The notes beneath the pieces were generated by a model, which did no database searches, was not told where the DNA came from, and saw nothing but the letters and a program-made list of their open reading frames with translations. This document shows positions 8,381 to 45,647 of a DNA stretch of 64,000 nucleotides, piece by piece. The stretch lies in IMG/VR virus record IMGVR_UViG_3300030616_000016, positions 1 through 64,000 of that record; one strand, written 5' to 3'. Position numbers and translations under genes: made by a program. The stretch's first letter is position 1. Every line of letters begins with the position of its first letter.

Positions 8381-10546
8381 CTACTCCAATGGGTCTTTGA
8401 CCTTGCCTTGGTTTACTAGTTTGCAGTATTCGGTATTGCATTCGAGTGCCATTCGATTACCCCTAAATCCATGAGCAAAACACTTCTCTCTTGGATTAAA
8501 TGTTGGGTCTTGTGCGCGTAATAGTACTTGCTCAAATTCTTCTATGTCGCTAGTAATTTTAGCAATTCTTAAATGTTCTGCTGTAGGAGTGCTTACTGTT
8601 GAGCATGGATAGAAGTAGCCGTCCGCTCCAAGAGTTATCTGGAAGTAGCCATATACACAATGATCAAAGTCAAATCTTTCTATATCTGTAAACCATGGAT
8701 AATTCCAGAATATATATGGTTTCTCATCTTTGCTTTCTGAAACAAGTGGCGCCAGCCACGCTTCATATTGTTTATCTCCCGGCACTTCAACCATTTCTTT
8801 ATACTTCTTTACATCGTCAAATGATTGATTGTACATAGCGAATGGTATAGAAAACCTTACAGAGTCTACTCCAATGTCTTTTGCTATATTCACAAGCGTG
8901 GAGAACTTCTCAGGGCTTGCTGTGTGCTCTGATATTAGGTATCCTAGCCTTATAGCATGTCCTTTGCCTGCTTTCTCTCTGATGTCCACAGCGCGCTTAA
9001 GAGCGTCTATAACCTCCCAGAACCTTTCTGTGTGTCTATGTCGCTTAACCTTTCCCCATCCCCATGGAGTAGCTGCGTCTAATGAAACCTGAAGATATGA
9101 TATAGTATCACCGTCGGCTAGTCTGTTGAGTTCAGTAAGAAAGCCGGTTTCTTGGTCTAGGCGTTTGAGAGCATATCCGTTGGTATGTATACCAAAGTGA
9201 TTTCCATATTCTCTCGTTTTAGCCATGAATGTCATAAAGTATGGATTCATAAGAGGTTCTGTATATGCACCTCCATATATATGCTGTGGAATTCGTCCTG
9301 CTATATTATCCAGAAGATGAAGACCCGTTATTTCCCAATCACCAAGTGCCTTTATGAACTTTTCGCCCGCACAATTTTTTGATACAAAACCGTTGGCTAC
9401 ATAGTTACCAGTTCCAGTTTCTATGCTATATACATCTTGCATACTTCCCTGCTCAATAGCAATAATTTTTGCATTTCCATGTATGGTACCGTCAAAAATT
9501 GCCTTTCTTTTCCTGGTTATTGATGGATTAGTTATACTAAAAAATTTGATGATGTCAGATGTTTTTGAAACTCGTATTTGAGTTTGTGCTTTGTTAACGC
9601 CCTCTCTTGTGGAAATTCCATATCTAACTTCTATAATATCTAATGCTTTTTTGATACGGTCTATTATATTATTATCTGTATTAGATATGGCAATTGTAGT
9701 TGTGGAATATGATCCTTCTGCATCGAAAATGCCACTTAGGAATCCTATCATAAAATCATATGATTTTTTGTGTGATTCCATAATGTTTTGTATTTCATCA
9801 ACTTGTGATTGAATATTTACCTGTATATAATGCAATTCTTTATTTGTACCTTGCATCTTTCCGCTACAAAATTTTAGATGTGGCATATATGATTTAAATC
9901 TTTGTATTGCTTCATAGTCTGTAAGGGCTAGTCTAAAGTTTCTGCATTTTTCATCATATGCTTTGCCGTACCTCTTCCTTTTATACATATGATTTCTCAG
10001 GCACCCATCGCCATTTGCGATACCACATATCCACCCTTCCTTAAAATCTTTACTTTCTGTACATGTTTTGCTTGGATATGATATCCATCTGATGTTTCTT
10101 GAGTGTCTTTTAGTTGCCTCTGTATATCTTTGATCTATTCTTAGCCATTTATGGTCTGGTGTGCATTCTGTAACACCTTTATTTGTTATAAGTTTGATTG
10201 TTTCTGCTTGCCTAATGCCAATCCATTTGACTTTTGTTTTGGTATTTTTCCAGTGAGTTCCGGATATGCCTTTCTTGAATCCGATCAGCTCGTCTCCTAC
10301 CCGTAAATCCTGTATCGGCTTATATTTTAGTTCGCTTGTTAAAACCATTGTATCTGCAGCATGACAATATTCACAAGACAATTGACAAGGCTTGATATGA
10401 TCTGCCGGCAGGTGTATTTCAAACTGTTTTGGATATACTGGTTTGCCATTGAAGAACTGAGACGGATCATCTTTCATATGGTTCATCAACTGATCCCAGT
10501 ATAAGTATTCCTTTATCCTTGGGTCTTCTCTTTCATTCTCAATCAT
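8381..10546 (-). CDS. Radical SAM protein with SPASM/twitch-like C-terminus, intein-containing
   Basis: CQLSCEY|intein|C reconstitutes CxxxCxxC; GGAYTEP, HTNG, VSLDA motifs. Confidence 0.85.
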   Translation of the reverse strand: MIENEREDPRIKEYLYWDQLMNHMKDDPSQFFNGKPVYPKQFEIHLPADHIKPCQLSCEYCHAADTMVLTSELKYKPIQDLRVGDELIGFKKGISGTHWKNTKTKVKWIGIRQAETIKLITNKGVTECTPDHKWLRIDQRYTEATKRHSRNIRWISYPSKTCTESKDFKEGWICGIANGDGCLRNHMYKRKRYGKAYDEKCRNFRLALTDYEAIQRFKSYMPHLKFCSGKMQGTNKELHYIQVNIQSQVDEIQNIMESHKKSYDFMIGFLSGIFDAEGSYSTTTIAISNTDNNIIDRIKKALDIIEVRYGISTREGVNKAQTQIRVSKTSDIIKFFSITNPSITRKRKAIFDGTIHGNAKIIAIEQGSMQDVYSIETGTGNYVANGFVSKNCAGEKFIKALGDWEITGLHLLDNIAGRIPQHIYGGAYTEPLMNPYFMTFMAKTREYGNHFGIHTNGYALKRLDQETGFLTELNRLADGDTISYLQVSLDAATPWGWGKVKRHRHTERFWEVIDALKRAVDIREKAGKGHAIRLGYLISEHTASPEKFSTLVNIAKDIGVDSVRFSIPFAMYNQSFDDVKKYKEMVEVPGDKQYEAWLAPLVSESKDEKPYIFWNYPWFTDIERFDFDHCVYGYFQITLGADGYFYPCSTVSTPTAEHLRIAKITSDIEEFEQVLLRAQDPTFNPREKCFAHGFRGNRMALECNTEYCKLVNQGKVKDPLE
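9374..10366 (-). mobile_element. LAGLIDADG intein (331 aa) in the radical SAM gene
   Basis: Begins CHAADTMVL, TPDH block B, GIANGDG and GIFDAEG motifs, ends YVANGFVSKN followed by C. Confidence 0.9.
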
Positions 10547-14439: not shown

Positions 14440-14894
14440 ACTTATTCCCCACGCATGTGGGGCAAACGTGCAAGCAGGGACTGACGCCCCTCGGAATTGA
14501 GATTCATCCCCACGCATGTGGGGTACACTGTTCTTGGTGTAACTCTTTTAAAGGCATCTGCGATTCATCCCCACGCATGTGGGGCAAACATTCCGTATAT
14601 TTCTGCTTCACGGCTTAACATGGATTCATCCCCACGTATGTGGGGCAAACGCATCCTCGCACTGCCGGTAAAGATACGCCAGCGATTCATCCCCACGCAT
14701 GTGGGGCAAACATTTGTTTGATGCCATGCTCTCGTGCAAGGCGCGATTCATCCCCACGCATGTGGGGCAAACAATGGGTTTCGGCGGCGGTCATGGCATT
14801 TTCTCGATTCATCCCCACGCATGTGGGGCAAACAATGGGTTTCGGCGGCGGTCATGGCATTTTCTCGATTCATCCCCACGCATGTGGGGCAAAC
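14440..14894 (-). CRISPR. Type I-E CRISPR array 1: 8 repeats (terminal one degenerate), 7 spacers
   Basis: 28-bp repeat GTTTGCCCCACATGCGTGGGGATGAATC (minus strand), 61-bp period. Confidence 0.97.
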
Positions 14895-14941
14895 ACCTAC
14901 ATCTTGTAGATGTAGGTGTTGGTTTTGCTACATATTGTATA

Positions 14942-17216: not shown

Positions 17217-18731
17217 CTAGGATTGTATAAACTTGTCTCTTAAATTAACAATATCTCTGTTTAGACTATTCTTAGCTTGAACATAAGCACGAATGTCTCT
17301 AGCTGATGACTTTCCACAGATACTATCAAATATTTGCAAAGCAGTGCGGATAACTGGAGATACCCACTTTATCTTCAGGTTTTCTATAGCATTTTCACTA
17401 TTGTCCTCAATAAGCTCTATTAGTATCTTATATTTATTATCCATCTTTGACCAAAACTCTGTCAAAGGATTATATCCCTGACTAGTATCTCTATTAGACT
17501 TAATCCTTTTAAAATATAAATTTATTTTCTCTAATAAAATACGTCCGATTTCATCCATGAATTTACAACTCTTAATATACTTATCAATAGATGATCTTTC
17601 TCTGATGTTCTTTGGCATTACCCCAATCCACTCATCTATATCAAATAGCTTTGTTTTTCTGTTCATGAAATTTGCTTGTACAGACCAAAGGACTATATAA
17701 GGACTACTAATTTCATTGGCCATTTCTCGTAATTGTCTGATATGTAGATTGGTTTTTGCTTGATCATCATATGTATTAATTACGGCTCCTAGATCTTTCC
17801 ATGCATAACTTCCTTTACGTAATGCAAAGTAGCGCTCTTCGCCCTTATAGTTTTTGCGCACTACAGTTTCAGGCTCTTTAACTAATATATTCCCATTAAC
17901 TTGTTTACGTAATTCAGGACAAATTGTTGTTCCGCTAACGAACCTTTTTGTTTCTCTGTCAATCTTTAATATACATGACCAGCTACACATTCTACCAAGA
18001 TATGTTTTATAAGCGTTTTTAGCAAATTCTTCGTCATTGACAGAACTAGGTTGCGTTTCCCACACTGGTTTACCCCATGATTCTTCTGGATTTGAGTAGC
18101 CAAGAAATGGTAGATTTTCTTTAAATATCATATTCATATGAATAGTTTCTTTAAGTGTATTACCAATAAGCTTAGTCATATTTCTATCGGTTCCAACACC
18201 TCTTACCTGGTAGTTGCCAAGTTTTTCTCCCCATGTGATTGGCTGTGCTGTGCCACCAGATGTAAACGTATGGAATGTAATAAGATTTTTGGCTATATTT
18301 GCGTCGCTAATATCTTCTGGTTTATAAGGCCTTGAATTAATACAATCATCAGATCTTGATGCGGTTTGTGATTGTATATTTAACTGAGATACGCATATGC
18401 CCTTTTCCCAGTCTGTGTTTTCTATTGATGGCACCTGCATAAAAGCCCGGTCTCCATATAGGTCAAACAGGTCTACTTTATTATTAATATATTCAATAGC
18501 AGAATCTTTAAACGTATCTTTAATTCTGGTCCACTCTTCCATGTTATCGGGGCCATCAATAGCTGCTTGGGATATACAAACCAACATTCTAATTAATGAC
18601 ATTCTAACAATAGCAGACTCATTGATAAACATAATATTATCTAAGTTCTGGAATAGATCTTTAAGTCCATATGTAGTGAATCGGTTATCTTGAAGCCTAA
18701 CTCGGATCCATGCATCATTTACTAAGTTCAT
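17217..18731 (-). CDS. cas8e: Type I-E large subunit Cas8e (Cse1)
   Basis: MNLVNDAWI, FDLY...AFMQ, GNTLKETI, PVWE. Confidence 0.88.
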   Translation of the reverse strand: MNLVNDAWIRVRLQDNRFTTYGLKDLFQNLDNIMFINESAIVRMSLIRMLVCISQAAIDGPDNMEEWTRIKDTFKDSAIEYINNKVDLFDLYGDRAFMQVPSIENTDWEKGICVSQLNIQSQTASRSDDCINSRPYKPEDISDANIAKNLITFHTFTSGGTAQPITWGEKLGNYQVRGVGTDRNMTKLIGNTLKETIHMNMIFKENLPFLGYSNPEESWGKPVWETQPSSVNDEEFAKNAYKTYLGRMCSWSCILKIDRETKRFVSGTTICPELRKQVNGNILVKEPETVVRKNYKGEERYFALRKGSYAWKDLGAVINTYDDQAKTNLHIRQLREMANEISSPYIVLWSVQANFMNRKTKLFDIDEWIGVMPKNIRERSSIDKYIKSCKFMDEIGRILLEKINLYFKRIKSNRDTSQGYNPLTEFWSKMDNKYKILIELIEDNSENAIENLKIKWVSPVIRTALQIFDSICGKSSARDIRAYVQAKNSLNRDIVNLRDKFIQS

Positions 18732-21250
18732 TCATCTTCTCCTAGTTTATATTTTTCTAGGCCAATAACATCATTATATTTGTAGCCTATATATTTACCA
18801 TAGAATGAGATTCTGCCGTCAAAACCAATTTTAAGGATTGGTGTTCTAGTGTTAAAGTACTTTTGCAGAAATTCTTCTGTTCTCAAATCGAACTTGTCAA
18901 ATACATATGATGGAAGTGATACAAGATTTCTATGTATTTGTATATCTGTCTCCCTATCCTTTAATCCTGGTATAATGGTAACTTCTATGTCATTAGATAG
19001 AGTAATGGTATTGTGCTTCTTATAATTGGATTGTTTGATAAGCAAACAACCAATCTTTCTTATGTTGCTGTGACGAGTTTCGACTTCTGCATCATCATAG
19101 AGTTCATTATAATTTTCATTTGTGATTGTGGCAGCTAGATTTTCTAGACTGTCCTTCTTTATCATATCTTTCTCAAACAGTTCCTGTATGTTCTTGTTCT
19201 TATGTTCTGTCTCTTTATATACAGCCTCTAAAAGAGTTTTTACATCTTCTGGTGTGTTAATCACTTCTGTATTCTTAATTACTTCATATGTTCTAAAAAG
19301 AATATATGTGGAATAGACGAAGTGATCATTAAATCCAAATATTTTGCTAAGATCAGATTCTTTACATAGCTTATCTATATTATCATGCATGATGAGCACT
19401 TCAGGACATACAGCTATTCTTTCTCGTATGTGTCTCCATAGCCTACCAAGTCTTTGGATTAGCATATCTATTGGACATAGTTTTGTAATGAGAAAATCAA
19501 AGTCGATGTCAACACTTTGTTCTAGTACTTGTGTAGATACAAGGATACATCCTTCAGCGTCTCCATCTTTACCTAAGGCATCTAACCACTCCTTTTCTAT
19601 CTCTATTCTTTTCCACTCTGGATAGTTAGAATGCAAGATGCCTATCTTAATATCATCACTGGTTTTTGATTTAATGAGTTTGTATAGATGCTGACACTCT
19701 TTTACTGTGTTCATTATGCATCCTACTCTTTGACCTGCTCTAGCTCTATTAATGGCTATTTCTGCAGATTTGCAATAGTCCGTTTCTTGCATTGTAACTT
19801 TTATATTTTTGTTTACTCCCTGACTACGTACCTTAATGTTCTTAATCTTAGTGCTTTGCTTAATAGTAATAAGGGGATAATCGTGCTTATTTATATCATC
19901 AGATTCTAGAATTTGAGTGCGCATTTTATTTGTCAGTGTAGCAGATAGAATGATAACTGTGCAATCAATCTTGGATAGTAAATTTATGAGCCTGTGAATA
20001 AGTGTGTTGGTAAACACATCGTATGAATGGATCTCATCTAGAATTACAACCTTTCCAGCCAGTCCGGCTTTTCTCAATGTATTATATCTAACAGGTAGAA
20101 CACCAAGTAAAGATTGATCTATTGTACCAACAGCAAACTGACTAAGCAAAGCATAGTTTTTATAATCAAACCAGTTTTTACCTTCTATCTTAATAGAGCT
20201 ATCTGATACAGGGCTTTGTATATTATTCTCATACATCCATGCCTTACCATGAGCTAATTTTACGTAGTCTTTATTATTAGATATAGTTTTTATGAAAGGC
20301 TGAATTCTTTCATAGATCTTATTACTTGTGGTTCTCGTGGGTAATGCGAAATATATCCCGCTGGCTTCTTTCCTATCAAGCAATTTATATGCTGCATAAA
20401 GAGCCGCTTCAGTTTTGCCTAATCCAGTAGGCGCTTCTACAATGGAAATAGCATTTTTAGTTATATTATTTGACAGTTCATATTGAACGTCATAAGGTGA
20501 ATAACCAAAAATGTCTTTAAAGGATAGATTGGGCAAAATATCCAGCTGTTTCCATCCGCATAGCTGTAATGCTTTGCTTGCATCATTATTATTTATATCT
20601 TCGAATAAGCTATTGTTAGATGCTATATGATCTGATATAGATACAAATCCTGTAATGGTATCTATTATATCTATATCTATTATCTCAGACAGCGCTCTCT
20701 TTTCATCTGCAGTTAGATCAGCTAACTGATGTTCTATAAATAGCTTTCGTTGTTCTGACCACGTACTTGATCCATATCTTTCACTTTCATCATTGTCTGC
20801 TATATCATACTTAGTAGCTCCATGATGCTTATATGCAATAATGCTCAGAATGTTGGCAATAGATGCCTCAGCATATGTTCGTAAAGATGTGTTACCTATT
20901 TTAGCATGGTTATCTTCGAATGACATTCCAAATAGTTTACATAGATACATAAAGATAGGATCATTTCTTAATTCTTCTTGTGCCTCAGCTGGTAGATTGT
21001 TAAACATCTTTTTATCAAACCCTGGACTTATTTTACCAGTATCATGTGTTCTGGATCCGCATATAACTGGTAAACTATATTTATCAATCATAAAATCAGG
21101 CATGATATTGATAAGTTCTCTTGCAACATCTTCTACCTTTTTAGAATGTTGCAACACTGTCTCGCCAAAACCACCATCTTTTGTTTTTGCTGGACAGTCG
21201 AGCCATGGTATAGCAGGAATATCCACGACATTAGATTCTATTCTTGGCAT
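18728..21250 (-). CDS. cas3: Cas3 HD nuclease-helicase
   Basis: HDTGK, HHG, SDH, APTGLGKT, DEIH, SAT, QRLGRLWRH. Confidence 0.95.
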   Translation of the reverse strand: MPRIESNVVDIPAIPWLDCPAKTKDGGFGETVLQHSKKVEDVARELINIMPDFMIDKYSLPVICGSRTHDTGKISPGFDKKMFNNLPAEAQEELRNDPIFMYLCKLFGMSFEDNHAKIGNTSLRTYAEASIANILSIIAYKHHGATKYDIADNDESERYGSSTWSEQRKLFIEHQLADLTADEKRALSEIIDIDIIDTITGFVSISDHIASNNSLFEDINNNDASKALQLCGWKQLDILPNLSFKDIFGYSPYDVQYELSNNITKNAISIVEAPTGLGKTEAALYAAYKLLDRKEASGIYFALPTRTTSNKIYERIQPFIKTISNNKDYVKLAHGKAWMYENNIQSPVSDSSIKIEGKNWFDYKNYALLSQFAVGTIDQSLLGVLPVRYNTLRKAGLAGKVVILDEIHSYDVFTNTLIHRLINLLSKIDCTVIILSATLTNKMRTQILESDDINKHDYPLITIKQSTKIKNIKVRSQGVNKNIKVTMQETDYCKSAEIAINRARAGQRVGCIMNTVKECQHLYKLIKSKTSDDIKIGILHSNYPEWKRIEIEKEWLDALGKDGDAEGCILVSTQVLEQSVDIDFDFLITKLCPIDMLIQRLGRLWRHIRERIAVCPEVLIMHDNIDKLCKESDLSKIFGFNDHFVYSTYILFRTYEVIKNTEVINTPEDVKTLLEAVYKETEHKNKNIQELFEKDMIKKDSLENLAATITNENYNELYDDAEVETRHSNIRKIGCLLIKQSNYKKHNTITLSNDIEVTIIPGLKDRETDIQIHRNLVSLPSYVFDKFDLRTEEFLQKYFNTRTPILKIGFDGRISFYGKYIGYKYNDVIGLEKYKLGEDE

Positions 21251-21269
21251 TAGTCATAATCCTATTATA

Positions 21270-21968
21270 AATAAATCCCCACGTATGTGGGGCAAACAAT
21301 ATTCCTGAGTACAAATTCAGAAAAGATTTCGATTCATCCCCACTTATGTGGGGCAAACTTTGGGGTGGGTTAAAGTGTTGCGACGCTGATCGATTCATCC
21401 CCACGCGTGTGGGGTACACATGTTGACATGATCCGGCAGGACGGCACGCTGAGATTCATCCCCACGCGTGTGGGGTACACATGCAAAGCAAGAAGATGGT
21501 GCAGTCGAGGAGCGATTCATCCCCACGCGTGTGGGGTACACATGATATGCCATGGATTATCCCTGATTACCCTCGATTCATCCCCACGCACGTGGGGTAC
21601 ACTTCAGAGTCGCTATTGGATTTGAACCTGACACCGATTCATCCCCACGCACGTGGGGTACACGCATAACGGGAGATCGGACGCGAAGCGTAGAGCGATT
21701 CATCCCCACGCACGTGGGGTACACCAGTTTTTTGCCAATCAGGATGGAGCAGTTTGCGATTCATCCCCACGCACGTGGGGTACACATAACAAGGCAGCAG
21801 GCCATCAATGCCCAGTGCGATTCATCCCCACGCGTGTGGGGTACACATGTTGACATGATCCGGCAGGACGGCACGCTGAGATTCATCCCCACGCGTGTGG
21901 GGTACACATGATATCGCTTTTGCGAAGCTTCCAGTCCGGAGATTCATCCCCACGCGTGTGGGGTACAC
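21270..21968 (-). CRISPR. Type I-E CRISPR array 2: 12 repeats, 11 spacers
   Basis: Repeat GTGTACCCCACRYGCGTGGGGATGAATC (minus strand), 61-bp period. Confidence 0.97.
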
Positions 21969-22253
21969 GCCAAGATTTGGTGCCATGTGAATACATCAAC
22001 CACAATGTATTGTGGTTAAATCATGCTAAGAGGTTAACGGATTGTCTTATGTTTAGAACAATTTGGACTTGCTTATAAATGCCGCCATATTGTCAACATA
22101 AGTCTCAATCATTTCAAGCTCAGCCAAGGACATAGCTATAAGCTTGTCCTTGGTGATCTTTTTGATAATCGATTCCGCGATTTCTTCTTTCTTTACTTCT
22201 TCAGGTGTACTTGCTGAATCCATATTATATACCTAGAATAATTGTTGGTTGTA

Positions 22254-22558: not shown

Positions 22559-22892
22559 GACTTTTCCCCACACATTGTGGGGCTAACTTACTCTGGGCAA
22601 TAATTCATAGTCCAGTTAGTGATTCATCCCCACATACGTGGGGTAAACGGAGGAGACCTGGATGGCGATATGTGTATGTTAGATTCATCCCCACGCATGT
22701 GGGGAAAACGCAATTTGTTTACGCTCGCCATCTTTATAAGCAGATTCATCCCCACATACGTGGGGCAAACTTGACGAAGAAAGATCCGTCAATTCAAACG
22801 CTCGATTCATCCCCACGCACGTGGGGTAAACGATTTTGCTCTTTGTGTCGCCTGCTCAACAAAAGATTCATCCCCACATACGTGGGGTACAC
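22559..22892 (-). CRISPR. Type I-E CRISPR array 3: 6 variable repeats, 5 spacers
   Basis: Same repeat family, 61-bp period. Confidence 0.95.
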
Positions 22893-22913: not shown

Positions 22914-22966
22914 TACCCCTGACAGGAGTCGAACCTGCACGCCCGAAGGCACTAGATTCTAAGTCT
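22914..22966 (-). pseudogene. 3' half of an interrupted tRNA-Leu(TAG)
   Basis: AGACTTAGAATCTAG, variable arm, T arm, then CAGGGGTA; no adjoining 5' half. Confidence 0.85.
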
Positions 22967-23363
22967 TACGGCTAAGTTGTAATCTTCTACACCATTTACC
23001 GACGCACGATTTACCGCAGAATGGACCGTTCATTTTATCTTTCTGTCTGCGGCGTTCATCCTTTGCCATTACCTTTTTTGTATTACCACATTCAACGCAT
23101 ACTATGGTTGTCCATTCTATCTGCTTGCGATGATGATTTATATGTTCCGCTTTTGATTTAATTTCTAAGTTATATATACTATTATTCTGTTTGTTTCCAT
23201 CCTTGTGATGTACAAGTTCAGATGAGTCCAATTTTCTTCCAAGACTCTTCTCCATAACTTCTCGGTGCATCAACACAGTTGCTTTGCTGTCATCGCTGTA
23301 TTTTACTGTACACGCAAGATATCCTTCTAGGTTGAACCAATTAGATCGGTAAACTTCTTTCAT
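22959..23363 (-). CDS. HNH homing endonuclease
   Basis: MHR..., VHHKDGNKQNN..NL; SD GGAG before ATG 23363. Confidence 0.88.
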   Translation of the reverse strand: MKEVYRSNWFNLEGYLACTVKYSDDSKATVLMHREVMEKSLGRKLDSSELVHHKDGNKQNNSIYNLEIKSKAEHINHHRKQIEWTTIVCVECGNTKKVMAKDERRRQKDKMNGPFCGKSCVGKWCRRLQLSRKT

Positions 23364-24774: not shown

Positions 24775-24816
24775 ATGGAAGGTTGACTGTAGCTCTACCG
24801 ACTGAGCTACCCAAGC
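24775..24816 (-). pseudogene. Truncated tRNA 5' half
   Basis: GCTTGGG-TA-GCTCAGTCGGTAGAGC with no anticodon or T arm. Confidence 0.65.
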
Positions 24817-24826
24817 ATAAAAATCA

Positions 24827-25631: not shown

Positions 25632-26234
25632 CTAGTCTTCATCAAGTTCAACATCCCAATAAGCATCAGAAACAAACTTCTGCCATGACACTTTTCTCTT
25701 AAATATAGGTATTTTAAGAGCAGTCATGCCATGAGGCTCAATTGGTTTCTTTCTTAGCTTCATACCAGATTCTGCAGGAGTTCTATTGCCCTTATTGTTG
25801 TTACATTTAACACAGGCAATAACACAGTTCTTCCAGGTAGTTTTACCACCCTGTGCTTTAGGGATGATATGATCAATTGTGGCGTCTGAAGTTTGTAGCT
25901 GAACACCGCAGTATTGACATGAACAGCTATCACGTTTAAATAGATTGCGGCGTGACAGCTTCAACCGATGTGTAGGCATCTTGCCATAGCTAATCAGACG
26001 TATTACTTCAGGCACCTTTACTTCTAGTCTAACAGTTTTTATAAACTGTTCTCCTTCAACGACTTTCAAATCGGCCCATTCCTCAAAATTATATATAGAA
26101 TAGTCATCTGGTAGTATGGCTTGTGCACGGTCTTTAGCCATTAATTCAATGGCATGACGTACAGATGCAAATCCGATTGGCGTCCAGTTTTTGTTTAGTA
26201 CAAGCGTTGGTTCCTGAAGTACCACATTAATCAC
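25632..26234 (-). CDS. HNH endonuclease (McrA-like)
   Basis: LVLN..., RD..CQYCG, TIDHIIP..GG..W.N...C..CN. Confidence 0.9.
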   Translation of the reverse strand: MINVVLQEPTLVLNKNWTPIGFASVRHAIELMAKDRAQAILPDDYSIYNFEEWADLKVVEGEQFIKTVRLEVKVPEVIRLISYGKMPTHRLKLSRRNLFKRDSCSCQYCGVQLQTSDATIDHIIPKAQGGKTTWKNCVIACVKCNNNKGNRTPAESGMKLRKKPIEPHGMTALKIPIFKRKVSWQKFVSDAYWDVELDED

Positions 26235-27498: not shown

Positions 27499-27690
27499 CT
27501 AGTGCATAAGGGTTGCCACATTCACAGCAAGAATATATAGAAGGACAGTGATCTTTTGCAACACTGTTGCTCGTCTTTCCCACTCATCTTCAGTAGTATC
27601 GTCACCTTCCTCATATGTTCTTTCTCTATCCATAGCAAGATAGATAGCCTCGACTGAGGTCATTTCATCATTCAGGCATTTTAATATCAT
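27499..27690 (-). CDS. Hypothetical protein
   Basis: ATGA overlap with upstream gene. Confidence 0.45.
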   Translation of the reverse strand: MILKCLNDEMTSVEAIYLAMDRERTYEEGDDTTEDEWERRATVLQKITVLLYILAVNVATLMH

Positions 27691-28989: not shown

Positions 28990-29781
28990 CTATGTATATT
29001 TAGTTTCTGGTGATGCCCATCCAGCAAAATCAGAAATATCTTGCTTATCAAAATCATCTGAATAATGTATCAAGTACATCTTGTCTTTGATTGATTTATC
29101 AAGCATTTTCAAGTCTGCTAATGGAGCATGAACAGCACCAGGAAAGAACTGCACGTCGTGAAACATTATTTTTGACTTATGAGCATACATTTCAATAAGT
29201 TCTGGATCAAATCTTGTGTCACCAGATACAAATATTTTCTCATCAGGAAGATATATACCAAATGATATAAAGGAGCTTTCCCAGTCTGCAGATTGTTCAG
29301 GGATATGTTTGGTTCTGAATATCTCTATATTTATTCCTTGATATTCAACTTCGAATATCTCTCTAGGTTCATGTTGTTTCCATTTAGGTCTAATAACATC
29401 AAAGAAATCTTCAAAATTAAGTTTCTTCATCTGATCGTTTTCTTCATTGTATTCAAGACCACCGCGTAATGTATAATCCCAGAGAATTCTTTGGTAGTTT
29501 TGTTCAATAATCATCTTGAGTTTTGGTTTACCTAGAAACTCTTGGCCGACATATCTATTCATAAGAGCTAGCATTTCTATTCCACCAACATGATCTGCAT
29601 GAGAATGTGTTGGGAGAATACATTCTATATCTATCGGTTGGATTCCTTTATCGGCGATAGCTCTTGGGCCGGTCATGCCAAAATCTACAAAGACATCGCT
29701 TTTTGTACCATGAATGATAAAGTTAGTTTGGTGATTTTTTGCCGCGAAGGCTGATCCAACACCAAGGAATTCGATGCTCAT
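28990..29781 (-). CDS. Metallo-beta-lactamase-fold hydrolase (RNase Z-like)
   Basis: FLGVGSA, THSHADH, SGDT, VHA, HY motifs; located in the tRNA cluster. Confidence 0.8.
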   Translation of the reverse strand: MSIEFLGVGSAFAAKNHQTNFIIHGTKSDVFVDFGMTGPRAIADKGIQPIDIECILPTHSHADHVGGIEMLALMNRYVGQEFLGKPKLKMIIEQNYQRILWDYTLRGGLEYNEENDQMKKLNFEDFFDVIRPKWKQHEPREIFEVEYQGINIEIFRTKHIPEQSADWESSFISFGIYLPDEKIFVSGDTRFDPELIEMYAHKSKIMFHDVQFFPGAVHAPLADLKMLDKSIKDKMYLIHYSDDFDKQDISDFAGWASPETKYT

Positions 29782-32289: not shown

Positions 32290-32373
32290 TCGGGACGGGA
32301 GGATTTGAACCTCCGAGGGCATTAATGCCACCTGGTCCCAAACATAGCGTTATAGCAGATTTAGCTATAGACC
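32290..32373 (-). pseudogene. Damaged tRNA(TGG) with an intact 3' half (long variable arm) and a diverged 5' half
   Basis: TTTGGGA-CCAGG...GGTTCAAATCC-CGTCCCGA; 5' strand does not pair. Confidence 0.7.
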
Positions 32374-32874
32374 AATATTTTTAATTTGTCCATTATGAAA
32401 TGCGGCATGACAATTTTTACACAATACAGTGCATTTTTTAAGCTCAGACTCTAATCTCTTCCATGACCAATATCTCATTGTTTTAAATGATTGGTCCTTA
32501 ACATTAGGGTCTATATGGTGAATATCCAAAGAGCAAATGAATTTATTGAATCCACAATGCATGCACTTCCCGCCTAAAAACTCCACTGCCTTTTGTCTTG
32601 TTTCTTTTGCCTTTTTGTTATTATACGCATTCTGACATTTGCCGCAAATACTCTTTTTATGTCCATAAAACTTTTTGGGATCCGTCTCTCCACAAGAACA
32701 TTTCCTTATAGTGGCCATATCTTTTGGGAGTTTTCCTTTTGGTCCACGCCTAGTTTTCAATCCAAATTTTTTCAACCAATATCTAACACAGTCCTGAGAT
32801 ACTGACAATTTGTCTGATATCTGGCGTAAGCTCAAACCTTCTTCTATTAATTTATTTAAAATATTCTGTTCCAT
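32365..32874 (-). CDS. HTH-HNH endonuclease
   Basis: N-terminal HTH; GGKCMHCG...LDIHH...KCTVLCKNCH. Confidence 0.85.
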   Translation of the reverse strand: MEQNILNKLIEEGLSLRQISDKLSVSQDCVRYWLKKFGLKTRRGPKGKLPKDMATIRKCSCGETDPKKFYGHKKSICGKCQNAYNNKKAKETRQKAVEFLGGKCMHCGFNKFICSLDIHHIDPNVKDQSFKTMRYWSWKRLESELKKCTVLCKNCHAAFHNGQIKNIGL

Positions 32875-35549: not shown

Positions 35550-35625
35550 TGGTGACCCCACGGGGAATCGAACCCCGATCCACAGACTGAAAATCTGTTA
35601 TGCTCAACCGTTACACCATGGGGCC
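35550..35625 (-). tRNA. tRNA-Glu(TTC), first tRNA of the cluster
   Basis: ACAGA-TTTTCAG-TCTGT, CCA. Confidence 0.9.
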
Positions 35626-35698
35626 ACATTGAATAAGATACACTGCCTGACTATTGCTGGCCAGGCAGTGTTTGGTTGCCATTATTCTAGATATATAA

Positions 35699-35710
35699 TT
35701 TTCAAAGATC
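35699..35710 (-). promoter_or_regulatory. rrn-type boxA-like antitermination element GATCTTTGAAAA
   Basis: Resembles rRNA-leader boxA; lies between the attenuator and the first tRNA. Confidence 0.55.
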
Positions 35711-35785
35711 TACATTACCCATATTCTACAGAGTAATGATTGCTACAATAATTGCAATATACGTGTTCTCACGGGCACGATATTC

Positions 35786-35821
35786 AAATAAAAAACCCGC
35801 AGGTTTTTAGGTCTGCGGGTT
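35786..35821 (-). terminator. Intrinsic terminator (attenuator) of the tRNA operon leader
   Basis: AACCCGCAG-10 nt-CTGCGGGTT-TTTTATTT. Confidence 0.85.
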
Positions 35822-35850
35822 AGATGTTTTTTATTTCTGTGTTGCTTACC

Positions 35851-35970
35851 CTAACCCGCTCCGCTCCAATCGACCATTGTTCGATATGATCCACTAATGG
35901 ATATACCGGTGGCCGGCAGGCAATCTGCCTGTTCGAACGTATTAATGGGTTGTTTATGTAAGCTAAGCAT
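35851..35970 (-). CDS. 39-aa leader peptide MLSLHKQPINTFEQADCLPATGISISGSYRTMVDWSGAG
   Basis: GGAG upstream, ATG..TAG; all 20 amino acids; its 3' end is complementary to the terminator 5' arm. Confidence 0.75.
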   Translation of the reverse strand: MLSLHKQPINTFEQADCLPATGISISGSYRTMVDWSGAG

Positions 35971-36006
35971 TTGAATTCTATAACTCCATAATTAGGTTAT
36001 AGCATA

Positions 36007-36034
36007 ATAATAGCACTGAAACGTATTAAGTCAA
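36007..36034 (-). promoter_or_regulatory. Promoter TTGACT-N16-TATTAT of the leader/tRNA operon
   Basis: Same geometry as the other promoters in the window. Confidence 0.65.
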
Positions 36035-36054
36035 GAACAAAATTAGTTTTTTGT

Positions 36055-36480
36055 TTAGGACCCGCAGTTCTTACATGTTTCATCTTTGGTTTCTTTCTTC
36101 CAACCACAATACTCACACTTTACATCTAATGGTTTTATCGCATCAAGAAATTCTTCATCATTGCTTTGTAGCAATGAAGCGTATAAGAGATAGTCAGGCT
36201 TATGAGTGTCATATGGCAATTCTTCTAAATAAGTAGCAGTTATTTCTACATCACAATAACCTTTGTTTGCAATCCATATTTCTCTGGCTGCTCTTTCAGA
36301 GAATTCATCTTCACTTTCACCTCCGCATAGATGTCCTTCTCCAGACATCCATATATGATAATCATTTCCAGGGCCTACACTATCTATGCTCCATATTTCT
36401 TCTATAGCTTCGACTATTTCATCACGTCTGTTTTTGTCGAACTCTTTTATACTGAATTCCATTTGGTAATATCTACTCAT
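36055..36480 (-). CDS. Hypothetical protein with C-terminal Zn ribbon
   Basis: CEYC...CKNC. Confidence 0.55.
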   Translation of the reverse strand: MSRYYQMEFSIKEFDKNRRDEIVEAIEEIWSIDSVGPGNDYHIWMSGEGHLCGGESEDEFSERAAREIWIANKGYCDVEITATYLEELPYDTHKPDYLLYASLLQSNDEEFLDAIKPLDVKCEYCGWKKETKDETCKNCGS

Positions 36481-43592: not shown

Positions 43593-45647
43593 ATGAAAGC
43601 ATTAGGATTTGATTGTGGAACGTACAACTTAGTAATGGCGTCTCCTGGCAAGGAAGAGGGAAAGCCAAGTATCAAGCGTGAGATTAATGTATTCCTTAAG
43701 ATTGAGAACCCACAAAAGTTTACTTTAGGTATGTTACGCAAACAAGGTGTTCCAATGATGGAAGAAGATGGCTCAGTATATATTCTTGGACAAGCTGCAA
43801 TTGACCTTGCAGTAGATCTAGGTACTACATATCGCAGACCTATGAAAGCAGGGTGCTTGTCTCCTGAAGAGAAAGATGCATTTAAGATCCTTGGTTATAT
43901 GCTCAAAGGAATGGTTGGAAGTCTTAAGGAAGAGACTGTATTGTTCTATAGTGTACCTGCAGAACCTATTGATGCACAAGGCGATACAAAATACCATGAG
44001 AAGGTTATTGGATCCATTCTTGGAACAATTGATAACCTAACGGCTAAACCTCTAAATGAAGCTTCAGCAATCATTTATGCATGTACTAATAATCAAACAG
44101 GCATTGGCATTTCATGTGTTACACCTGATACTTCTATCATAACAGATAAAGGTATTATAGAAATAGCAAAATTACATGAAGGTGATAGAGTTTTAACAAG
44201 ACTTGGTACTTATGAACAAGTATCTAAAGTAACAGTAAGTGAAAGGGATGAAGAGATACAAGAGATAAATTTTTTCTGTTCTAATCGAAACCTTAGAATA
44301 ACGTCGGAACACAAAATTTATACAAAAAGTAATGGCATTGAACAATGGAAGCGTTCTGATCAAGTAACTAATGAAGATTATGTTATGATGCCCAGTGTAT
44401 CTTATAAAGATAAAACGTGTTATATAGCTATAGACAAACGTGTTACATGCTCTAAAGACACAAAACGAGAATTCTATGAAGTACATGAAAATGTAGCAAA
44501 GTTCATAGGCCTTTTTCTAGGAGATGGACATATAGAACTATCTAAAGGTGGAATATTCTTTGATTTTGGTAAGCATGAAACAAATTTGCACCAATTTGTA
44601 ATGGATATAGCAAAAGAAAAATTTGGTAATTCTATGTCTTTTATCGAAAAGGGAGAAGAATGTATAAGATGTCAAATGAATAATAAGGCACTTGCAAGGT
44701 GGTTAAAAGAAAATTGTTACGATAGTAGTGGTAAAAAGAAATTGCCTTGGTTAGTAGACGAGTTAAATAGACCGGCAAGAATCGGTTTGTTGTCAGGATT
44801 ATTAGAGAGCGATGGGCATATTGGAGATAATGAAGTATCATTTGAGAATACTAGCTCAGCTCTTACTATGTTAGTTCAACAATTATGTTTATCTGAGGGA
44901 TATACTGGTAGTTATTGGTTCAGAGATTCTAGGTCTGGTGGAACAATAGAAAATAGAACAATAACAGGAAACGATAGCTGCTGTTTCACATTGCATGAGC
45001 AATATATACAATCGCTCAAGTTTCTGATTAGTGGCAATAGACATAGGACAACATCTTTCCAAGATAGTAAACAATGGAACAAAGTGCGCAGTAATCAAAA
45101 AGTTAAATATACAGGCAAAGTGTATGATTTAACAGTTGAAAATGAACATTCTTTTTGCGTACCAGGATGCTGTATACACAATTGTGGTGCTGGTATGATT
45201 AACGTAGCTTTTGTAAAGATGGGTGTCAATATATTTGAGTTTAGTCTTACAAGCTCTGGTGATTGGATTGATAGGGAAAGTGCTAGGGTTACAGGAGAAT
45301 CAGAAGCTTTTATTAATCAGGCTAAACATAATATTGACTTGTCTAAAGAACCACAAAATATGACTGAGATGGCTATTTCTAAGAATTATGAGATACTTAT
45401 TGAGCGTAGCATTCTTAAGATCAAAGATGGCATTATCAATTCTAAAGGCAAGGCTAAGACACAGAATCCTATACCTATTGTTATAGCAGGTGGTACTAGT
45501 TCTGTGAATGGTTTTATGGCAGTGTTTAAGAAAACACTAGAAAGGATTGAAATGCCTATTCCTATATCAGAATGCATACAGCCTCTGAAGCCATTACATT
45601 CAGTAGCTAAAGGATGTCTTGTTGCTGCAGAGCTTGAAGCTGGATAG
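43593..45647 (+). CDS. Actin-like (MreB/ParM-type) ATPase, intein-containing
   Basis: GFDCGT, RRPMKAG, VPA, NEA.A, GIS|CGAG, AGGTS, VAKG. Confidence 0.8.
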   Translation: MKALGFDCGTYNLVMASPGKEEGKPSIKREINVFLKIENPQKFTLGMLRKQGVPMMEEDGSVYILGQAAIDLAVDLGTTYRRPMKAGCLSPEEKDAFKILGYMLKGMVGSLKEETVLFYSVPAEPIDAQGDTKYHEKVIGSILGTIDNLTAKPLNEASAIIYACTNNQTGIGISCVTPDTSIITDKGIIEIAKLHEGDRVLTRLGTYEQVSKVTVSERDEEIQEINFFCSNRNLRITSEHKIYTKSNGIEQWKRSDQVTNEDYVMMPSVSYKDKTCYIAIDKRVTCSKDTKREFYEVHENVAKFIGLFLGDGHIELSKGGIFFDFGKHETNLHQFVMDIAKEKFGNSMSFIEKGEECIRCQMNNKALARWLKENCYDSSGKKKLPWLVDELNRPARIGLLSGLLESDGHIGDNEVSFENTSSALTMLVQQLCLSEGYTGSYWFRDSRSGGTIENRTITGNDSCCFTLHEQYIQSLKFLISGNRHRTTSFQDSKQWNKVRSNQKVKYTGKVYDLTVENEHSFCVPGCCIHNCGAGMINVAFVKMGVNIFEFSLTSSGDWIDRESARVTGESEAFINQAKHNIDLSKEPQNMTEMAISKNYEILIERSILKIKDGIINSKGKAKTQNPIPIVIAGGTSSVNGFMAVFKKTLERIEMPIPISECIQPLKPLHSVAKGCLVAAELEAG
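44115..45182 (+). mobile_element. LAGLIDADG intein (356 aa)
   Basis: CVTPDT, TSEH, GLFLGDG, GLLESDG, VYDLTV...HN followed by C. Confidence 0.92.

What the first reader, a model, noticed from the sequence alone, without database searches (positions are those of the whole stretch)
35786..36034. Candidate pan-tRNA-sensing attenuator: an all-20-amino-acid leader peptide gating the phage tRNA operon
Seen on the minus strand, in order: promoter TTGACT-N16-TATTAT (36034-36007), GGAG, then a 39-codon ORF (35970-35851) missed by the ORF track, MLSLHKQPINTFEQADCLPATGISISGSYRTMVDWSGAG*. It contains every one of the 20 amino acids and uses 33 different codons; the first 24 codons are all different and include ATA, CAA/CAG and CTT/TTA/CTG. 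Even with uniform frequencies about 72 draws are expected to collect 20 types. Its last nucleotides, GCGGGUUAG (stop included), are perfectly complementary to CUAACCCGC (35823-35815), which overlaps the 5' arm of an intrinsic terminator (AACCCGCAG..CUGCGGGUU-UUUUAUUU). The first of 25 tRNA genes follows. Established: trp/his-type attenuators use runs of one amino acid. Inference: a ribosome reaching the stop masks the antiterminator and transcription terminates, whereas a stall at almost any codon (tRNA cleaved by a host anticodon nuclease or toxin, or uncharged) frees it and switches on the replacement tRNAs. This would be a general translation-damage sensor for counter-defence. I know of no described example. 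Caveats: SD spacing is long (13 nt), and no Phe/Trp tRNA is in the window although both codons are in the leader.
Basis: partly seen in the sequence, partly recalled or inferred. Interest (0 to 1): 0.96.

Follow-up and report, generated by a model that had tools for sequence, protein, structure and literature searches.

The report
Terminator switch before phage tRNA island
An uncultured marine-sediment jumbo phage has, just ahead of its tRNA gene island, a promoter followed by a folded leader RNA that can form either a stop or a go structure; this on/off switch looks real, but the claim that its short reading frame is a purpose-built sensor for all 20 amino acids has no independent support.

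Summary

The strongest feature is the terminator/antiterminator pair. Its complementarity beats 99.7% of shuffles and is unique among the window's 5 strict terminators. The two helices have nearly equal energy (-14.2 and -14.7 kcal/mol). So an attenuator-type switch is likely.

The "all-20 by design" reading is weak:
- P(all 20 in 39 codons) is 0.003-0.012, and 2 of the window's 165 small ORFs show it. The other lies inside a CRISPR array.
- GGAG sits 13 nt from the ATG, while this phage's genes use 5-9 nt.
- Codon usage is in the lowest 0.8% of real gene segments.
- The ORF lies in a GC-rich, strongly folded domain.
- A stall at the only Trp codon would mask the antiterminator.
- The tRNA island mixes tRNAs with ORFs and has at least one further consensus promoter-like site and further terminator-like hairpins.

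No relative or RNA data set could be found, so conservation and translation remain untested. Verdict: probable attenuator, trigger unresolved, pan-tRNA sensing improbable (~7%).

The parts
36007..36034 (-). Sigma-70-type promoter-like site TTGACT-N16-(TGc)TATTAT, 20 nt after the stop of the upstream 141-aa gene. Predicted transcript start is near 36000.
   Evidence: 10/12 matches plus extended -10 TG; about 1.5 such TG sites expected per 64-kb strand. It belongs to a set of TTGAC[AT]-N16-TAnnnT sites, most of them about 28-36 nt before an ATG.
35971..36000 (-). Predicted 5' UTR with GGAG at 35987-35984, 13 nt before the ATG. GGAG is partly paired in a small 5' hairpin (36000-35980).
   Evidence: The phage's own genes place GGAG/AGGAG 5-9 nt from the start in 39 of 51 cases.
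35851..35970 (-). 39-codon ORF (all 20 amino acids, 33 codons), stop TAG at 35853-35851. Translation is unproven.
   Evidence: codon index 0.55, GC 48%; no small-protein homologue; no PHROG.
35843..35969 (-). Predicted structured domain. A closing helix (35969-35947 with 35857-35843) pairs the start-codon region with the stop-codon region and encloses hairpins at 35931-35917 and 35915-35871. It is a GC-rich island (52%) like the tRNA genes.
   Evidence: z -4.5 including the terminator; z -2.6.
35815..35859 (-). Antiterminator: 35859-35851 pairs with 35823-35815 (extendable to 35848/35826), with an A-rich loop. Isolated energy is -14.2 kcal/mol. It overlaps both the closing helix and the terminator 5' arm.
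   Evidence: p 0.002-0.003; the only one of 5 strict terminators with such a partner.
35786..35821 (-). Intrinsic terminator T1: 9-bp stem (35821-35813 with 35802-35794), 10-nt loop, U-run to 35786. Energy is -14.7 kcal/mol. It would also end transcripts coming from the upstream operon.
   Evidence: Weak, sub-threshold Rfam resemblance to Trp_leader and STnc240.
35640..35671 (-). Second, 12-bp hairpin with a weak U-rich tail, 14 nt before tRNA-Glu. It could be a second terminator or a processing signal.
   Evidence: PyrG_leader-like, 23 bits, below threshold.
35550..35625 (-). tRNA-Glu (TTC), the first gene of the tRNA/ORF island. It is followed directly by a 117-aa ORF (35531-35178) with a good SD.

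Best explanation
The region is a transcription attenuator. An early-type promoter (36034-36007) starts a leader of about 215 nt. Its 3' part can fold into either an intrinsic terminator (T1) or an antiterminator that uses the terminator's 5' arm. A third helix, which closes the structured leader domain, competes with the antiterminator for the same bases.

The switch meters how many polymerases, from this promoter and from the upstream glycosyltransferase/methyltransferase operon, continue into the first block of the tRNA island (tRNA-Glu, a 117-aa ORF, tRNA-Val and so on).

The simplest trigger is the ribosome on the 39-codon upstream ORF. A ribosome that reaches the last five sense codons or the stop covers the antiterminator arm, so T1 forms and transcription ends. 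A late, slow or absent ribosome leaves the antiterminator free, and transcription reads through. That would couple expression of this block inversely to translation capacity in general. It needs no particular amino-acid content, so the all-20 composition is most likely incidental.

Shown: the sequence elements, the competing helices and their energies, and the statistical excess of the antiterminator complement.
Inferred: that the promoter fires, that T1 terminates, that the ORF is translated, and that any switching occurs. A trigger that is not the ribosome (ligand, protein or RNA binding to the folded domain) stays possible and is listed as a rival. I favour the ribosome only about 2:1.
For: - Antiterminator complement: longest perfect match 9 nt, duplex -17.9 kcal/mol. 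Only 0.28% and 0.22% of 5000 dinucleotide shuffles of the upstream 171 nt reach these values.
- It is the only one of 5 strict terminators in the window with such a partner (z -4.4).
- Isolated energies are -14.2 (antiterminator) and -14.7 (terminator). The minimum-energy fold switches to the antiterminator when the 3' end is at 35812 and back to the terminator at 35794.
- Three mutually exclusive helices are mapped.
- Ribosome-masking model: the antiterminator is available for stalls at codons 1-34 and blocked for codons 35 to stop.
- The promoter belongs to a recurring TTGAC[AT]-N16-TAnnnT set that mostly sits about 30 nt before ORFs.
- No site of 9/12 or better lies between T1 and tRNA-Glu, so this block probably depends on read-through.
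- The stop-to-terminator distance (about 57 nt) is like that of classical attenuators (own knowledge of trpL).
Against: - This is a single orphan sequence. There is no relative for covariation or frame conservation.
- No RNA run was listed.
- The near-identical strain in run X2 has no difference in the leader.
- GGAG spacing of 13 nt lies outside the phage's 5-9 nt norm. The AUG and GGAG are paired in the predicted fold.
- Codon usage is like that of spurious ORFs.
- At full-length equilibrium the terminator wins unless the ribosome sits on codons 2-9, so the model needs kinetic control.
- With no ribosome the antiterminator forms first, so a poorly translated leader would be mostly ON.
- A second hairpin stands before tRNA-Glu.
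- Jumbo phages may use promoters that these scans cannot see.
Confidence: 0.45

Rival explanations
1. One reading: the leader peptide is built to contain every amino acid, so that loss or non-charging of almost any tRNA stalls the ribosome, frees the antiterminator, and switches on replacement tRNAs as a counter-defence.
For: - All 20 amino acids in 39 codons has p = 0.003-0.012 per ORF. First 24 codons all distinct has p = 0.0014-0.0045.
- The geometry allows stalls at codons 1-34 to leave the antiterminator free.
- The island also carries an Apyc1-like anti-defence gene.
- Phage tRNAs are known to counter tRNA-cleaving defences (PMC11464382, PMC11555353; abstracts).
Against: - Post-hoc selection: 2 of 165 ATG-ORFs of 30-50 aa in the window hold all 20, and the other lies in a CRISPR array.
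- Balanced base composition, as in structured RNA, raises the chance.
- Trp is codon 35, in the zone where a stall masks the antiterminator, and no Phe or Trp tRNA is supplied.
[quoted passage not shown] A complete stall would escape this argument.
- Poor SD spacing and non-coding-like codon usage.
- The island has at least one further consensus promoter-like site, so at most the first block is gated.
- No conservation data exist.
Confidence: 0.07
2. RNA-only attenuator. The folded domain 35969-35843, closed by a helix whose 3' strand overlaps the antiterminator, is a binding site for a small molecule, protein or RNA. Binding stabilises the closing helix, the antiterminator cannot form, and T1 terminates (the logic of an OFF riboswitch). 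The ORF is incidental.
For: - Multi-stem domain closed by a helix that competes with the antiterminator.
- GC island of 52% in a 37% genome, equal to the tRNA genes and in the top 2.4% of 100-nt windows.
- Folding z-scores of -2.6 (domain) and -4.5 (with the terminator).
- Codon usage is non-coding-like and the SD is mis-spaced.
Against: - No Rfam family reaches threshold, including riboswitches and T-box.
- No homologues, so there is no covariation.
- A z-score of -2.6 is modest.
- An ORF that starts and stops exactly in the two strands of the closing helix would be a coincidence.
Confidence: 0.15
3. A stand-alone small RNA gene, or a 3'-UTR-type small RNA with its own promoter. The promoter at 36034 makes a stable, structured RNA of about 215 nt that ends at T1. 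Neither the ORF nor the antiterminator complement has a function. The tRNAs are transcribed from promoters that the scans do not recognise.
For: - Promoter plus structured GC-rich RNA plus a strong terminator is the standard anatomy of a small RNA gene.
- T1 is also the first terminator after the upstream operon.
- From memory, unverified here: phage T4 encodes small stable RNAs of unknown function inside its tRNA cluster.
Against: - The antiterminator complement would be a 0.3% coincidence.
- No candidate promoter of 9/12 or better lies between T1 and tRNA-Glu.
- No Rfam family matches.
- There are no expression data.
Confidence: 0.2
4. An ordinary small early protein gene (39 aa) with its own promoter and a plain terminator, or no function at all: a chance ORF in the spacer between the upstream operon's last gene and its terminator.
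For: - Other promoters of the same type in the window sit about 30 nt before real ORFs. The 5' UTRs of 49090 and 36034 share ATAACCT.
- The island holds many small ORFs.
- Promoter-like sites are not enriched over shuffles in the regional scans, and only mildly on the window's minus strand.
Against: - Codon index is in the lowest 0.8% of real gene segments.
- SD spacing is 13 nt.
- No homologue of similar size among 1.84 billion representatives and no PHROG.
- The antiterminator complement is left unexplained.
Confidence: 0.13

Closest known systems
Ribosome-mediated transcription attenuators of amino-acid operons (trp, his, leu, thr, pheA leaders)
   Same: Promoter-proximal leader, short ORF, three competing helices (closing helix, antiterminator, terminator), stop codon placed so that a terminating ribosome covers the antiterminator strand, and an intrinsic terminator about 57 nt after the stop.
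   Different: No run of regulatory codons; no codon repeats within the first 24. The downstream genes are tRNAs and phage ORFs, not biosynthetic enzymes. SD is mis-spaced. Rfam Trp_leader scores 19.4 bits against a threshold of 41, and Thr_leader 15-16 against 55. With no ribosome the antiterminator is predicted to form first, whereas in trp the untranslated leader terminates (own knowledge).
Translation-stress-sensing upstream ORFs: toiL-topAI of E. coli (PMC12121999) and the antibiotic-responsive attenuators of vmlR and msrD (PMC9226507, PMC10314930)
   Same: A short upstream ORF whose ribosome can stall at different positions and so remodel downstream RNA structure. This gives a response to translation trouble in general rather than to one amino acid (abstracts). 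It is the nearest described logic to a general sensor.
   Different: Those systems respond to ribosome-targeting antibiotics. toiL works through ribosome-binding-site occlusion and Rho-dependent termination. All have experimental support. Here the output would be tRNA genes of a phage, the terminator is intrinsic, and nothing has been tested.
Expression platforms of OFF riboswitches and computationally predicted conditional terminators (PASIFIC, PMC5314783)
   Same: Two mutually exclusive structures, one of them a terminator, plus a closing helix of an upstream folded domain that competes with the antiterminator.
   Different: No known aptamer class matches. No ligand is suggested and there is no conservation.
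Small stable RNAs in phage tRNA clusters (T4) and cis-acting antitermination RNAs such as HK022 put (both from memory, not checked here)
   Same: A structured non-coding RNA placed just after an early promoter and next to, or ahead of, tRNA genes and terminators.
   Different: No sequence or structure comparison was possible. Neither needs an antiterminator that pairs with the terminator arm.

Membership tests
Ribosome-mediated transcription attenuator (trp/his class) | Leader transcript from a nearby promoter that ends in an intrinsic terminator before the regulated genes | tested here: met
   Promoter-like site at 36034-36007 and terminator at 35821-35786, with tRNA-Glu 160 nt further on. 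This is sequence prediction only.
Ribosome-mediated transcription attenuator (trp/his class) | Antiterminator helix that shares bases with the terminator 5' arm, and a third helix that competes with the antiterminator | tested here: met
   9-bp perfect complement, p 0.002-0.003. It is unique among 5 terminators. The helices are mapped.
Ribosome-mediated transcription attenuator (trp/his class) | Short leader ORF that is translated (functional ribosome-binding site) | tested here: inconclusive
   The ORF is present. GGAG lies 13 nt from the ATG against 5-9 nt in this phage. The AUG and GGAG are paired in the fold. Codon index is 0.55 against 0.73 +/- 0.07. No RNA or ribosome data exist.
Ribosome-mediated transcription attenuator (trp/his class) | Cluster of regulatory codons for the controlled amino acid in the control region | tested here: not met
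   33 different codons in 39; no codon repeats before position 25.
Ribosome-mediated transcription attenuator (trp/his class) | Ribosome position decides which helix forms | tested here: met
   In silico only. Masking -15 to +12 around the A site blocks the antiterminator for codons 35-40 and leaves it free for codons 1-34. At equilibrium only codons 2-9 keep it.
Ribosome-mediated transcription attenuator (trp/his class) | ORF frame and helices conserved, with covariation, in relatives | not testable with these tools
   No relative of the leader was found. INPHARED DNA and protein searches were empty. IMG/VR and JGI metagenomes returned only the source contig. The nearest relative of the neighbouring gene (59% identity) has different genes downstream.
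Known riboswitch, T-box or leader RNA families (Rfam 15) | Match to a curated covariance model at its gathering score | tested here: not met
   Nothing at threshold in 35620-36060. The best hits are STnc240 23.5/55, Trp_leader 19.4/41 and PyrG_leader 23.3/65 bits.
Stand-alone small RNA gene | Own promoter, own terminator, stable structure | tested here: met
   (z -4.5). These features do not exclude a cis-acting leader.
Stand-alone small RNA gene | Discrete transcript observed that ends at the terminator | not testable with these tools
   Only DNA runs hold the sequence. No RNA run was listed.
Small protein gene | Homologues of similar length, or coding-like codon usage | tested here: not met
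   phmmer against 1.84 billion representatives gave only 3 hits, all to repeats in proteins of 667-2487 aa. No PHROG. Codon index is in the lowest 0.8% of gene segments.

The most novel reading that the evidence does not exclude
The 39-codon leader really is a designed, near-complete amino-acid/tRNA sensor. A stall at any of about 19 amino-acid types (all but Trp) within codons 1-34 keeps the antiterminator and turns on the phage's first tRNA block. This would give the phage a general read-out of tRNA damage or starvation during infection.
Probability: 0.07. Interest if true: 0.9.

Novelty: new variant of a known kind. Interest (0 to 1): 0.42.

Why it matters
Phage tRNA genes are now known to rescue infection when host defences cut tRNAs (PMC11464382, PMC11555353). 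How phages control these genes is largely unexplored. Two literature searches here found no attenuator or leader described ahead of a phage tRNA cluster.

If the switch works, it would be a first case of conditional termination controlling entry into a phage tRNA island. If the ribosome is the trigger, it would link tRNA supply to translation capacity by feedback. It can be tested cheaply with a synthetic 450-bp template, even though the phage is uncultured. The specific all-20 idea would be striking, but at present it rests on one sequence and one coincidence.

Tried and rejected
1. Relatives for a conservation test. All of these failed:
- megablast, blastn and tblastn against 50,697 phage records were empty.
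- IMG/VR and JGI metagenome scans with the two upstream proteins returned only the source contig, IMGVR_UViG_3300030616_000016.
- The family of the 141-aa upstream protein occurs in 7 other large phage contigs, but none of those copies adjoins a tRNA array; 6 loci have no tRNA and one has a single tRNA 2.7 kb upstream.
- The closest methyltransferase relative (59% identity, L012) is followed by unrelated genes.
- The ORF after tRNA-Glu has only a 97% copy on a 570-bp contig.
- A hairpin pattern scan gave 14 unrelated hairpins besides the source contig itself.
- A tRNA-Glu 20-mer gave 3 unrelated loci.
- A tRNA-rich query gave only generic single-tRNA matches.

3. Strain variation. Run X2 carries a ~99% identical strain, but the leader is identical, so there is no signal.

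4. No paralogue of the leader exists in the window.

5. A three-phage look upstream of other tRNA arrays (Erwinia pEa_SNUABM_4, Pseudomonas phiHQ, Bacillus Mater) found nothing comparable. The sample is too small to mean anything.

6. Rejected ideas: a degenerate tRNA or known RNA family; a T-box (no match). Similarity to boxA or nut was checked by eye only, and none was convincing.

7. No other genetic code was considered, because nothing in the genome calls for one.

Full report
SOURCE AND SETTING

The window is part of a 231,647-bp viral contig from a marine-sediment metagenome, IMGVR_UViG_3300030616_000016 = Ga0272442_10000021. It is 36.7% G+C.

Around the finding, all genes lie on the minus strand. 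Upstream are a glycosyltransferase (38740-37907), a 475-aa protein with a methyltransferase domain (37910-36483), and a 141-aa protein with a zinc-ribbon-like C-terminus (36480-36055). Next comes a 429-nt gap that holds the finding. After that is a 12-kb island in which 25 tRNA genes are interleaved with ORFs. Those ORFs include three HNH endonucleases and an Apyc1-like hydrolase.

THE OBSERVATION

- Promoter-like site: TTGACT-N16-TATTAT at 36034-36007, with an extended -10 TG.
- GGAG at 35987-35984.
- A 39-codon ORF at 35970-35851 with 20 amino-acid types and 33 codon types. The first repeated codon is at position 25.
- GCGGGTTAG (35859-35851) is perfectly complementary to CTAACCCGC (35823-35815).
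- A 9-bp terminator stem (35821-35813 with 35802-35794) followed by a T-run.

The tRNA count of 25 is reached with 21 default ARAGORN calls, three relaxed calls, and one Asp-like gene just under the Rfam threshold. Phe and Trp are indeed missing.

First, tRNA-Glu starts 160 nt after the terminator, behind a second 12-bp hairpin (35671-35640). Second, the tRNAs are not one compact operon.

HOW UNUSUAL IS THE ALL-20 ORF?

Simulated 39-codon ORFs contain all 20 amino acids with the following probabilities:
- 0.007 with the phage's own codon usage.
- 0.003-0.008 with base-composition models.
- 0.012 when the leader's own bases are permuted.

The first 24 codons being all different has p = 0.0014-0.0045, but this is correlated with the first property.

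The window holds 165 ATG-initiated ORFs of 30-50 aa in six frames. Two have all 20 amino acids and six have 19. The other all-20 ORF lies inside a CRISPR array and is certainly not coding.

So the property is expected about once per window. It becomes notable only because of where this ORF sits, and that was noticed after the fact.

THE SWITCH IS THE STRONGER SIGNAL

I shuffled the 171 nt upstream of the terminator arm 5000 times, keeping dinucleotide content. Only 0.28% of shuffles gave a perfect complement of 9 nt or more that overlaps the arm. Only 0.22% gave a duplex as stable as the observed -17.9 kcal/mol.

Among the five perfect-stem terminators that a strict finder locates in the window, this is the only one with such a partner (z -4.4; the next best has p 0.09).

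In isolation the antiterminator folds at -14.2 kcal/mol and the terminator at -14.7 kcal/mol. Folding the growing transcript gives these steps:
- Before the antiterminator's 3' arm is made, the stop-codon region pairs with the start-codon region (35969-35947 with 35857-35843). This closes a multi-hairpin domain.
- When the 3' end reaches 35812, the minimum-energy fold switches to the antiterminator.
- When the terminator's 3' arm is complete (35794), it switches to terminator plus closing helix.

Three mutually exclusive helices of this kind are the hallmark of attenuators and riboswitch expression platforms (PMC5314783; own knowledge).

PROMOTER CONTEXT

Sigma-70-like sites are not enriched over shuffles in the two regional scans. 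On the window's minus strand, sites of 10/12 or better are only mildly above expectation (31 against 22.7 +/- 4.5).

However, the site at 36034 belongs to a recurring set of TTGAC[AT]-N16-TAnnnT sites (61560, 54114, 49090, 36034, 32909, 12034). Most of these lie 28-36 nt before an ATG. Its 5' UTR shares ATAACCT with that of 49090.

Between T1 and tRNA-Glu no site reaches 9/12, and the best are 8/12. So transcription of the first tRNA block plausibly depends on read-through of T1, unless the phage uses promoters of another type.

T1 is also the first terminator after the upstream operon.

IS THE ORF TRANSLATED?

The evidence leans against efficient translation.
- Of 51 long ORFs with an SD-like motif, 39 have it 5-9 nt from the start. 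The leader's GGAG is 13 nt away.
- GGAG and the AUG are both paired in the predicted fold.
- An in-frame AUU lies 7 nt after GGAG, but AUU starts are rare (sequence; own knowledge).
- A codon adaptation index built from the window's 28 longest ORFs gives 0.55 for the leader. Real 39-codon gene segments score 0.73 +/- 0.07, and only 0.8% score as low. All small ORFs of the window, mostly spurious, score 0.61 +/- 0.10.
- The ORF coincides with a G+C island of 52%, as high as the tRNA genes and in the top 2.4% of 100-nt windows.
- It also coincides with above-random folding: z -2.6 for the domain and -4.5 with the terminator.
- No protein of similar size resembles the peptide among 1.84 billion representatives or in PHROGs.

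Rare codons could be argued to be part of a sensor. The simpler reading is that the sequence is shaped by RNA structure.

Partly. I masked 15 nt before to 12 nt after the first base of the A-site codon.
- The antiterminator forms in the pre-terminator transcript when no ribosome is present, and for stalls at codons 1-34.
- It is blocked for codons 35-39 and for the stop codon.
- The only Trp codon is codon 35. A Trp stall would therefore favour termination, so at most 19 amino acids could be sensed.
- If the RNA equilibrates after the terminator is made, only stalls at codons 2-9 (L S L H K Q P I) keep the antiterminator. Only there does the ribosome hold the closing helix open.
- A leader that is not translated at all is predicted to read through. 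Combined with a weak ribosome-binding site, this would make the device mostly ON.

[quoted passage not shown] One codon per amino acid would respond only to near-complete loss of a tRNA.

SCOPE OF CONTROL

The island contains a perfect 12/12 consensus promoter-like site with TG at 32909-32882, directly before an HNH endonuclease gene. Other promoter-like sites and terminator-like hairpins follow, for example at 27514 and 25458.

Whatever the leader does, it can gate only the first block (tRNA-Glu, the 117-aa ORF, tRNA-Val and perhaps a few more), not 25 tRNAs.

COMPARATIVE AND EXPRESSION EVIDENCE

None could be obtained.
- No DNA or protein match in 50,697 phage records.
- Only the source contig in IMG/VR and JGI metagenomes.
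- The 141-aa protein family occurs in other large phage contigs, but not adjoining a tRNA array.
- The nearest methyltransferase relative (59% identity, a 3.7-kb contig) is followed by an unrelated gene and a gene whose product has a radical-SAM-like CxxxCxxC motif (by eye, not searched).
- The ORF after tRNA-Glu has only a 97% copy on a 570-bp contig.
- Pattern scans found nothing related.
- Two marine-sediment DNA runs hold the sequence. The second carries a strain with scattered differences (three at 35742, 35745 and 35760, between T1 and tRNA-Glu), but none in 35849-36041.
- No RNA run was listed.
- Rfam gives only sub-threshold, terminator-driven resemblances: Trp_leader 19.4 bits against 41, STnc240, and PyrG_leader for the second hairpin.

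CONCLUSION

The best-supported reading is a transcription attenuator at the entrance of the tRNA island (confidence about 0.45).
- The ribosome on the upstream ORF is the simplest trigger. In that reading, amino-acid completeness is incidental.
- An RNA-only trigger follows at 0.15.
- A stand-alone small RNA is at 0.20.
- A plain small gene or chance is at 0.13.

The nearest described logic for a general sensor is the toiL upstream ORF, which responds to many translation stresses (PMC12121999), together with antibiotic-responsive attenuators (PMC9226507, PMC10314930).

Two literature searches found no attenuator described ahead of phage tRNA genes. If the switch is confirmed, it would be a new variant of a known kind.

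Noticed in passing
window 14440-14926, 21262-21971, 22613-22892; Cas3 at 18728-21250 (-): Three CRISPR arrays (29-nt repeat, 32-nt spacers, period 61) flank a Cas3 gene with HD-nuclease and helicase domains. The phage therefore carries a type I CRISPR-Cas system right next to its tRNA island. Some spacers are duplicated (14744/14805; 21391/21818).
   Followed up: partly
window about 22685-22811 (-): The only other small ORF in the window with all 20 amino acids (41 aa) lies inside the third CRISPR array. It serves as a built-in control showing that non-coding, base-balanced DNA produces such ORFs.
   Followed up: yes
window 28990-29781 (-): A metallo-beta-lactamase-fold protein matches the anti-Pycsar Apyc1 family (PF23023, 109 bits against a cut-off of 50). 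It sits between tRNA genes and is a likely counter-defence gene inside the tRNA island.
   Followed up: partly
window 32365-32874, 25632-26141, 22959-23363 (-): Three HNH homing-endonuclease genes are interleaved with the tRNAs. The first sits 7 nt after a perfect consensus promoter-like site (32909-32882), which suggests a leaderless transcript.
   Followed up: partly
window 35640-35671 (-): A perfect 12-bp hairpin with a weak U-rich tail lies 14 nt before tRNA-Glu. It could be a second terminator or an RNA-processing signal. It gives a sub-threshold PyrG_leader-like hit.
   Followed up: partly
window 61560, 54114, 49090, 36034, 32909, 12034 (-): A recurring promoter-like motif TTGAC[AT]-N16-TAnnnT, mostly 28-36 nt before an ATG. 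This is probably the phage's host-polymerase (early) promoter set. The 5' UTRs of 49090 and 36034 share ATAACCT.
   Followed up: partly
window about 24790-24820 (-): A fragment that looks like the 5' half of a tRNA (acceptor and D arm) lies in a 480-nt gap between tRNA-Cys and tRNA-Gly. It is likely a decayed tRNA gene.
   Followed up: no
window 43593-45647 (+) and 8381-10546 (-): An actin-like (Volactin family) gene is interrupted by an intein with a LAGLIDADG domain. A radical-SAM-like gene also carries a LAGLIDADG domain. Several kinds of mobile element occur in this genome.
   Followed up: no
window 35742, 35745, 35760: A second marine-sediment run (X2) holds a ~99% identical strain. Its nearest differences to the finding fall in the spacer between T1 and tRNA-Glu, and none falls in the leader.
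   Followed up: yes
window 35976-35978 (-): An AUU codon lies in frame six bases (two codons) upstream of the ATG and 7 nt after GGAG. It is the only start-like codon at normal SD spacing. Whether it is used is unknown.
   Followed up: no
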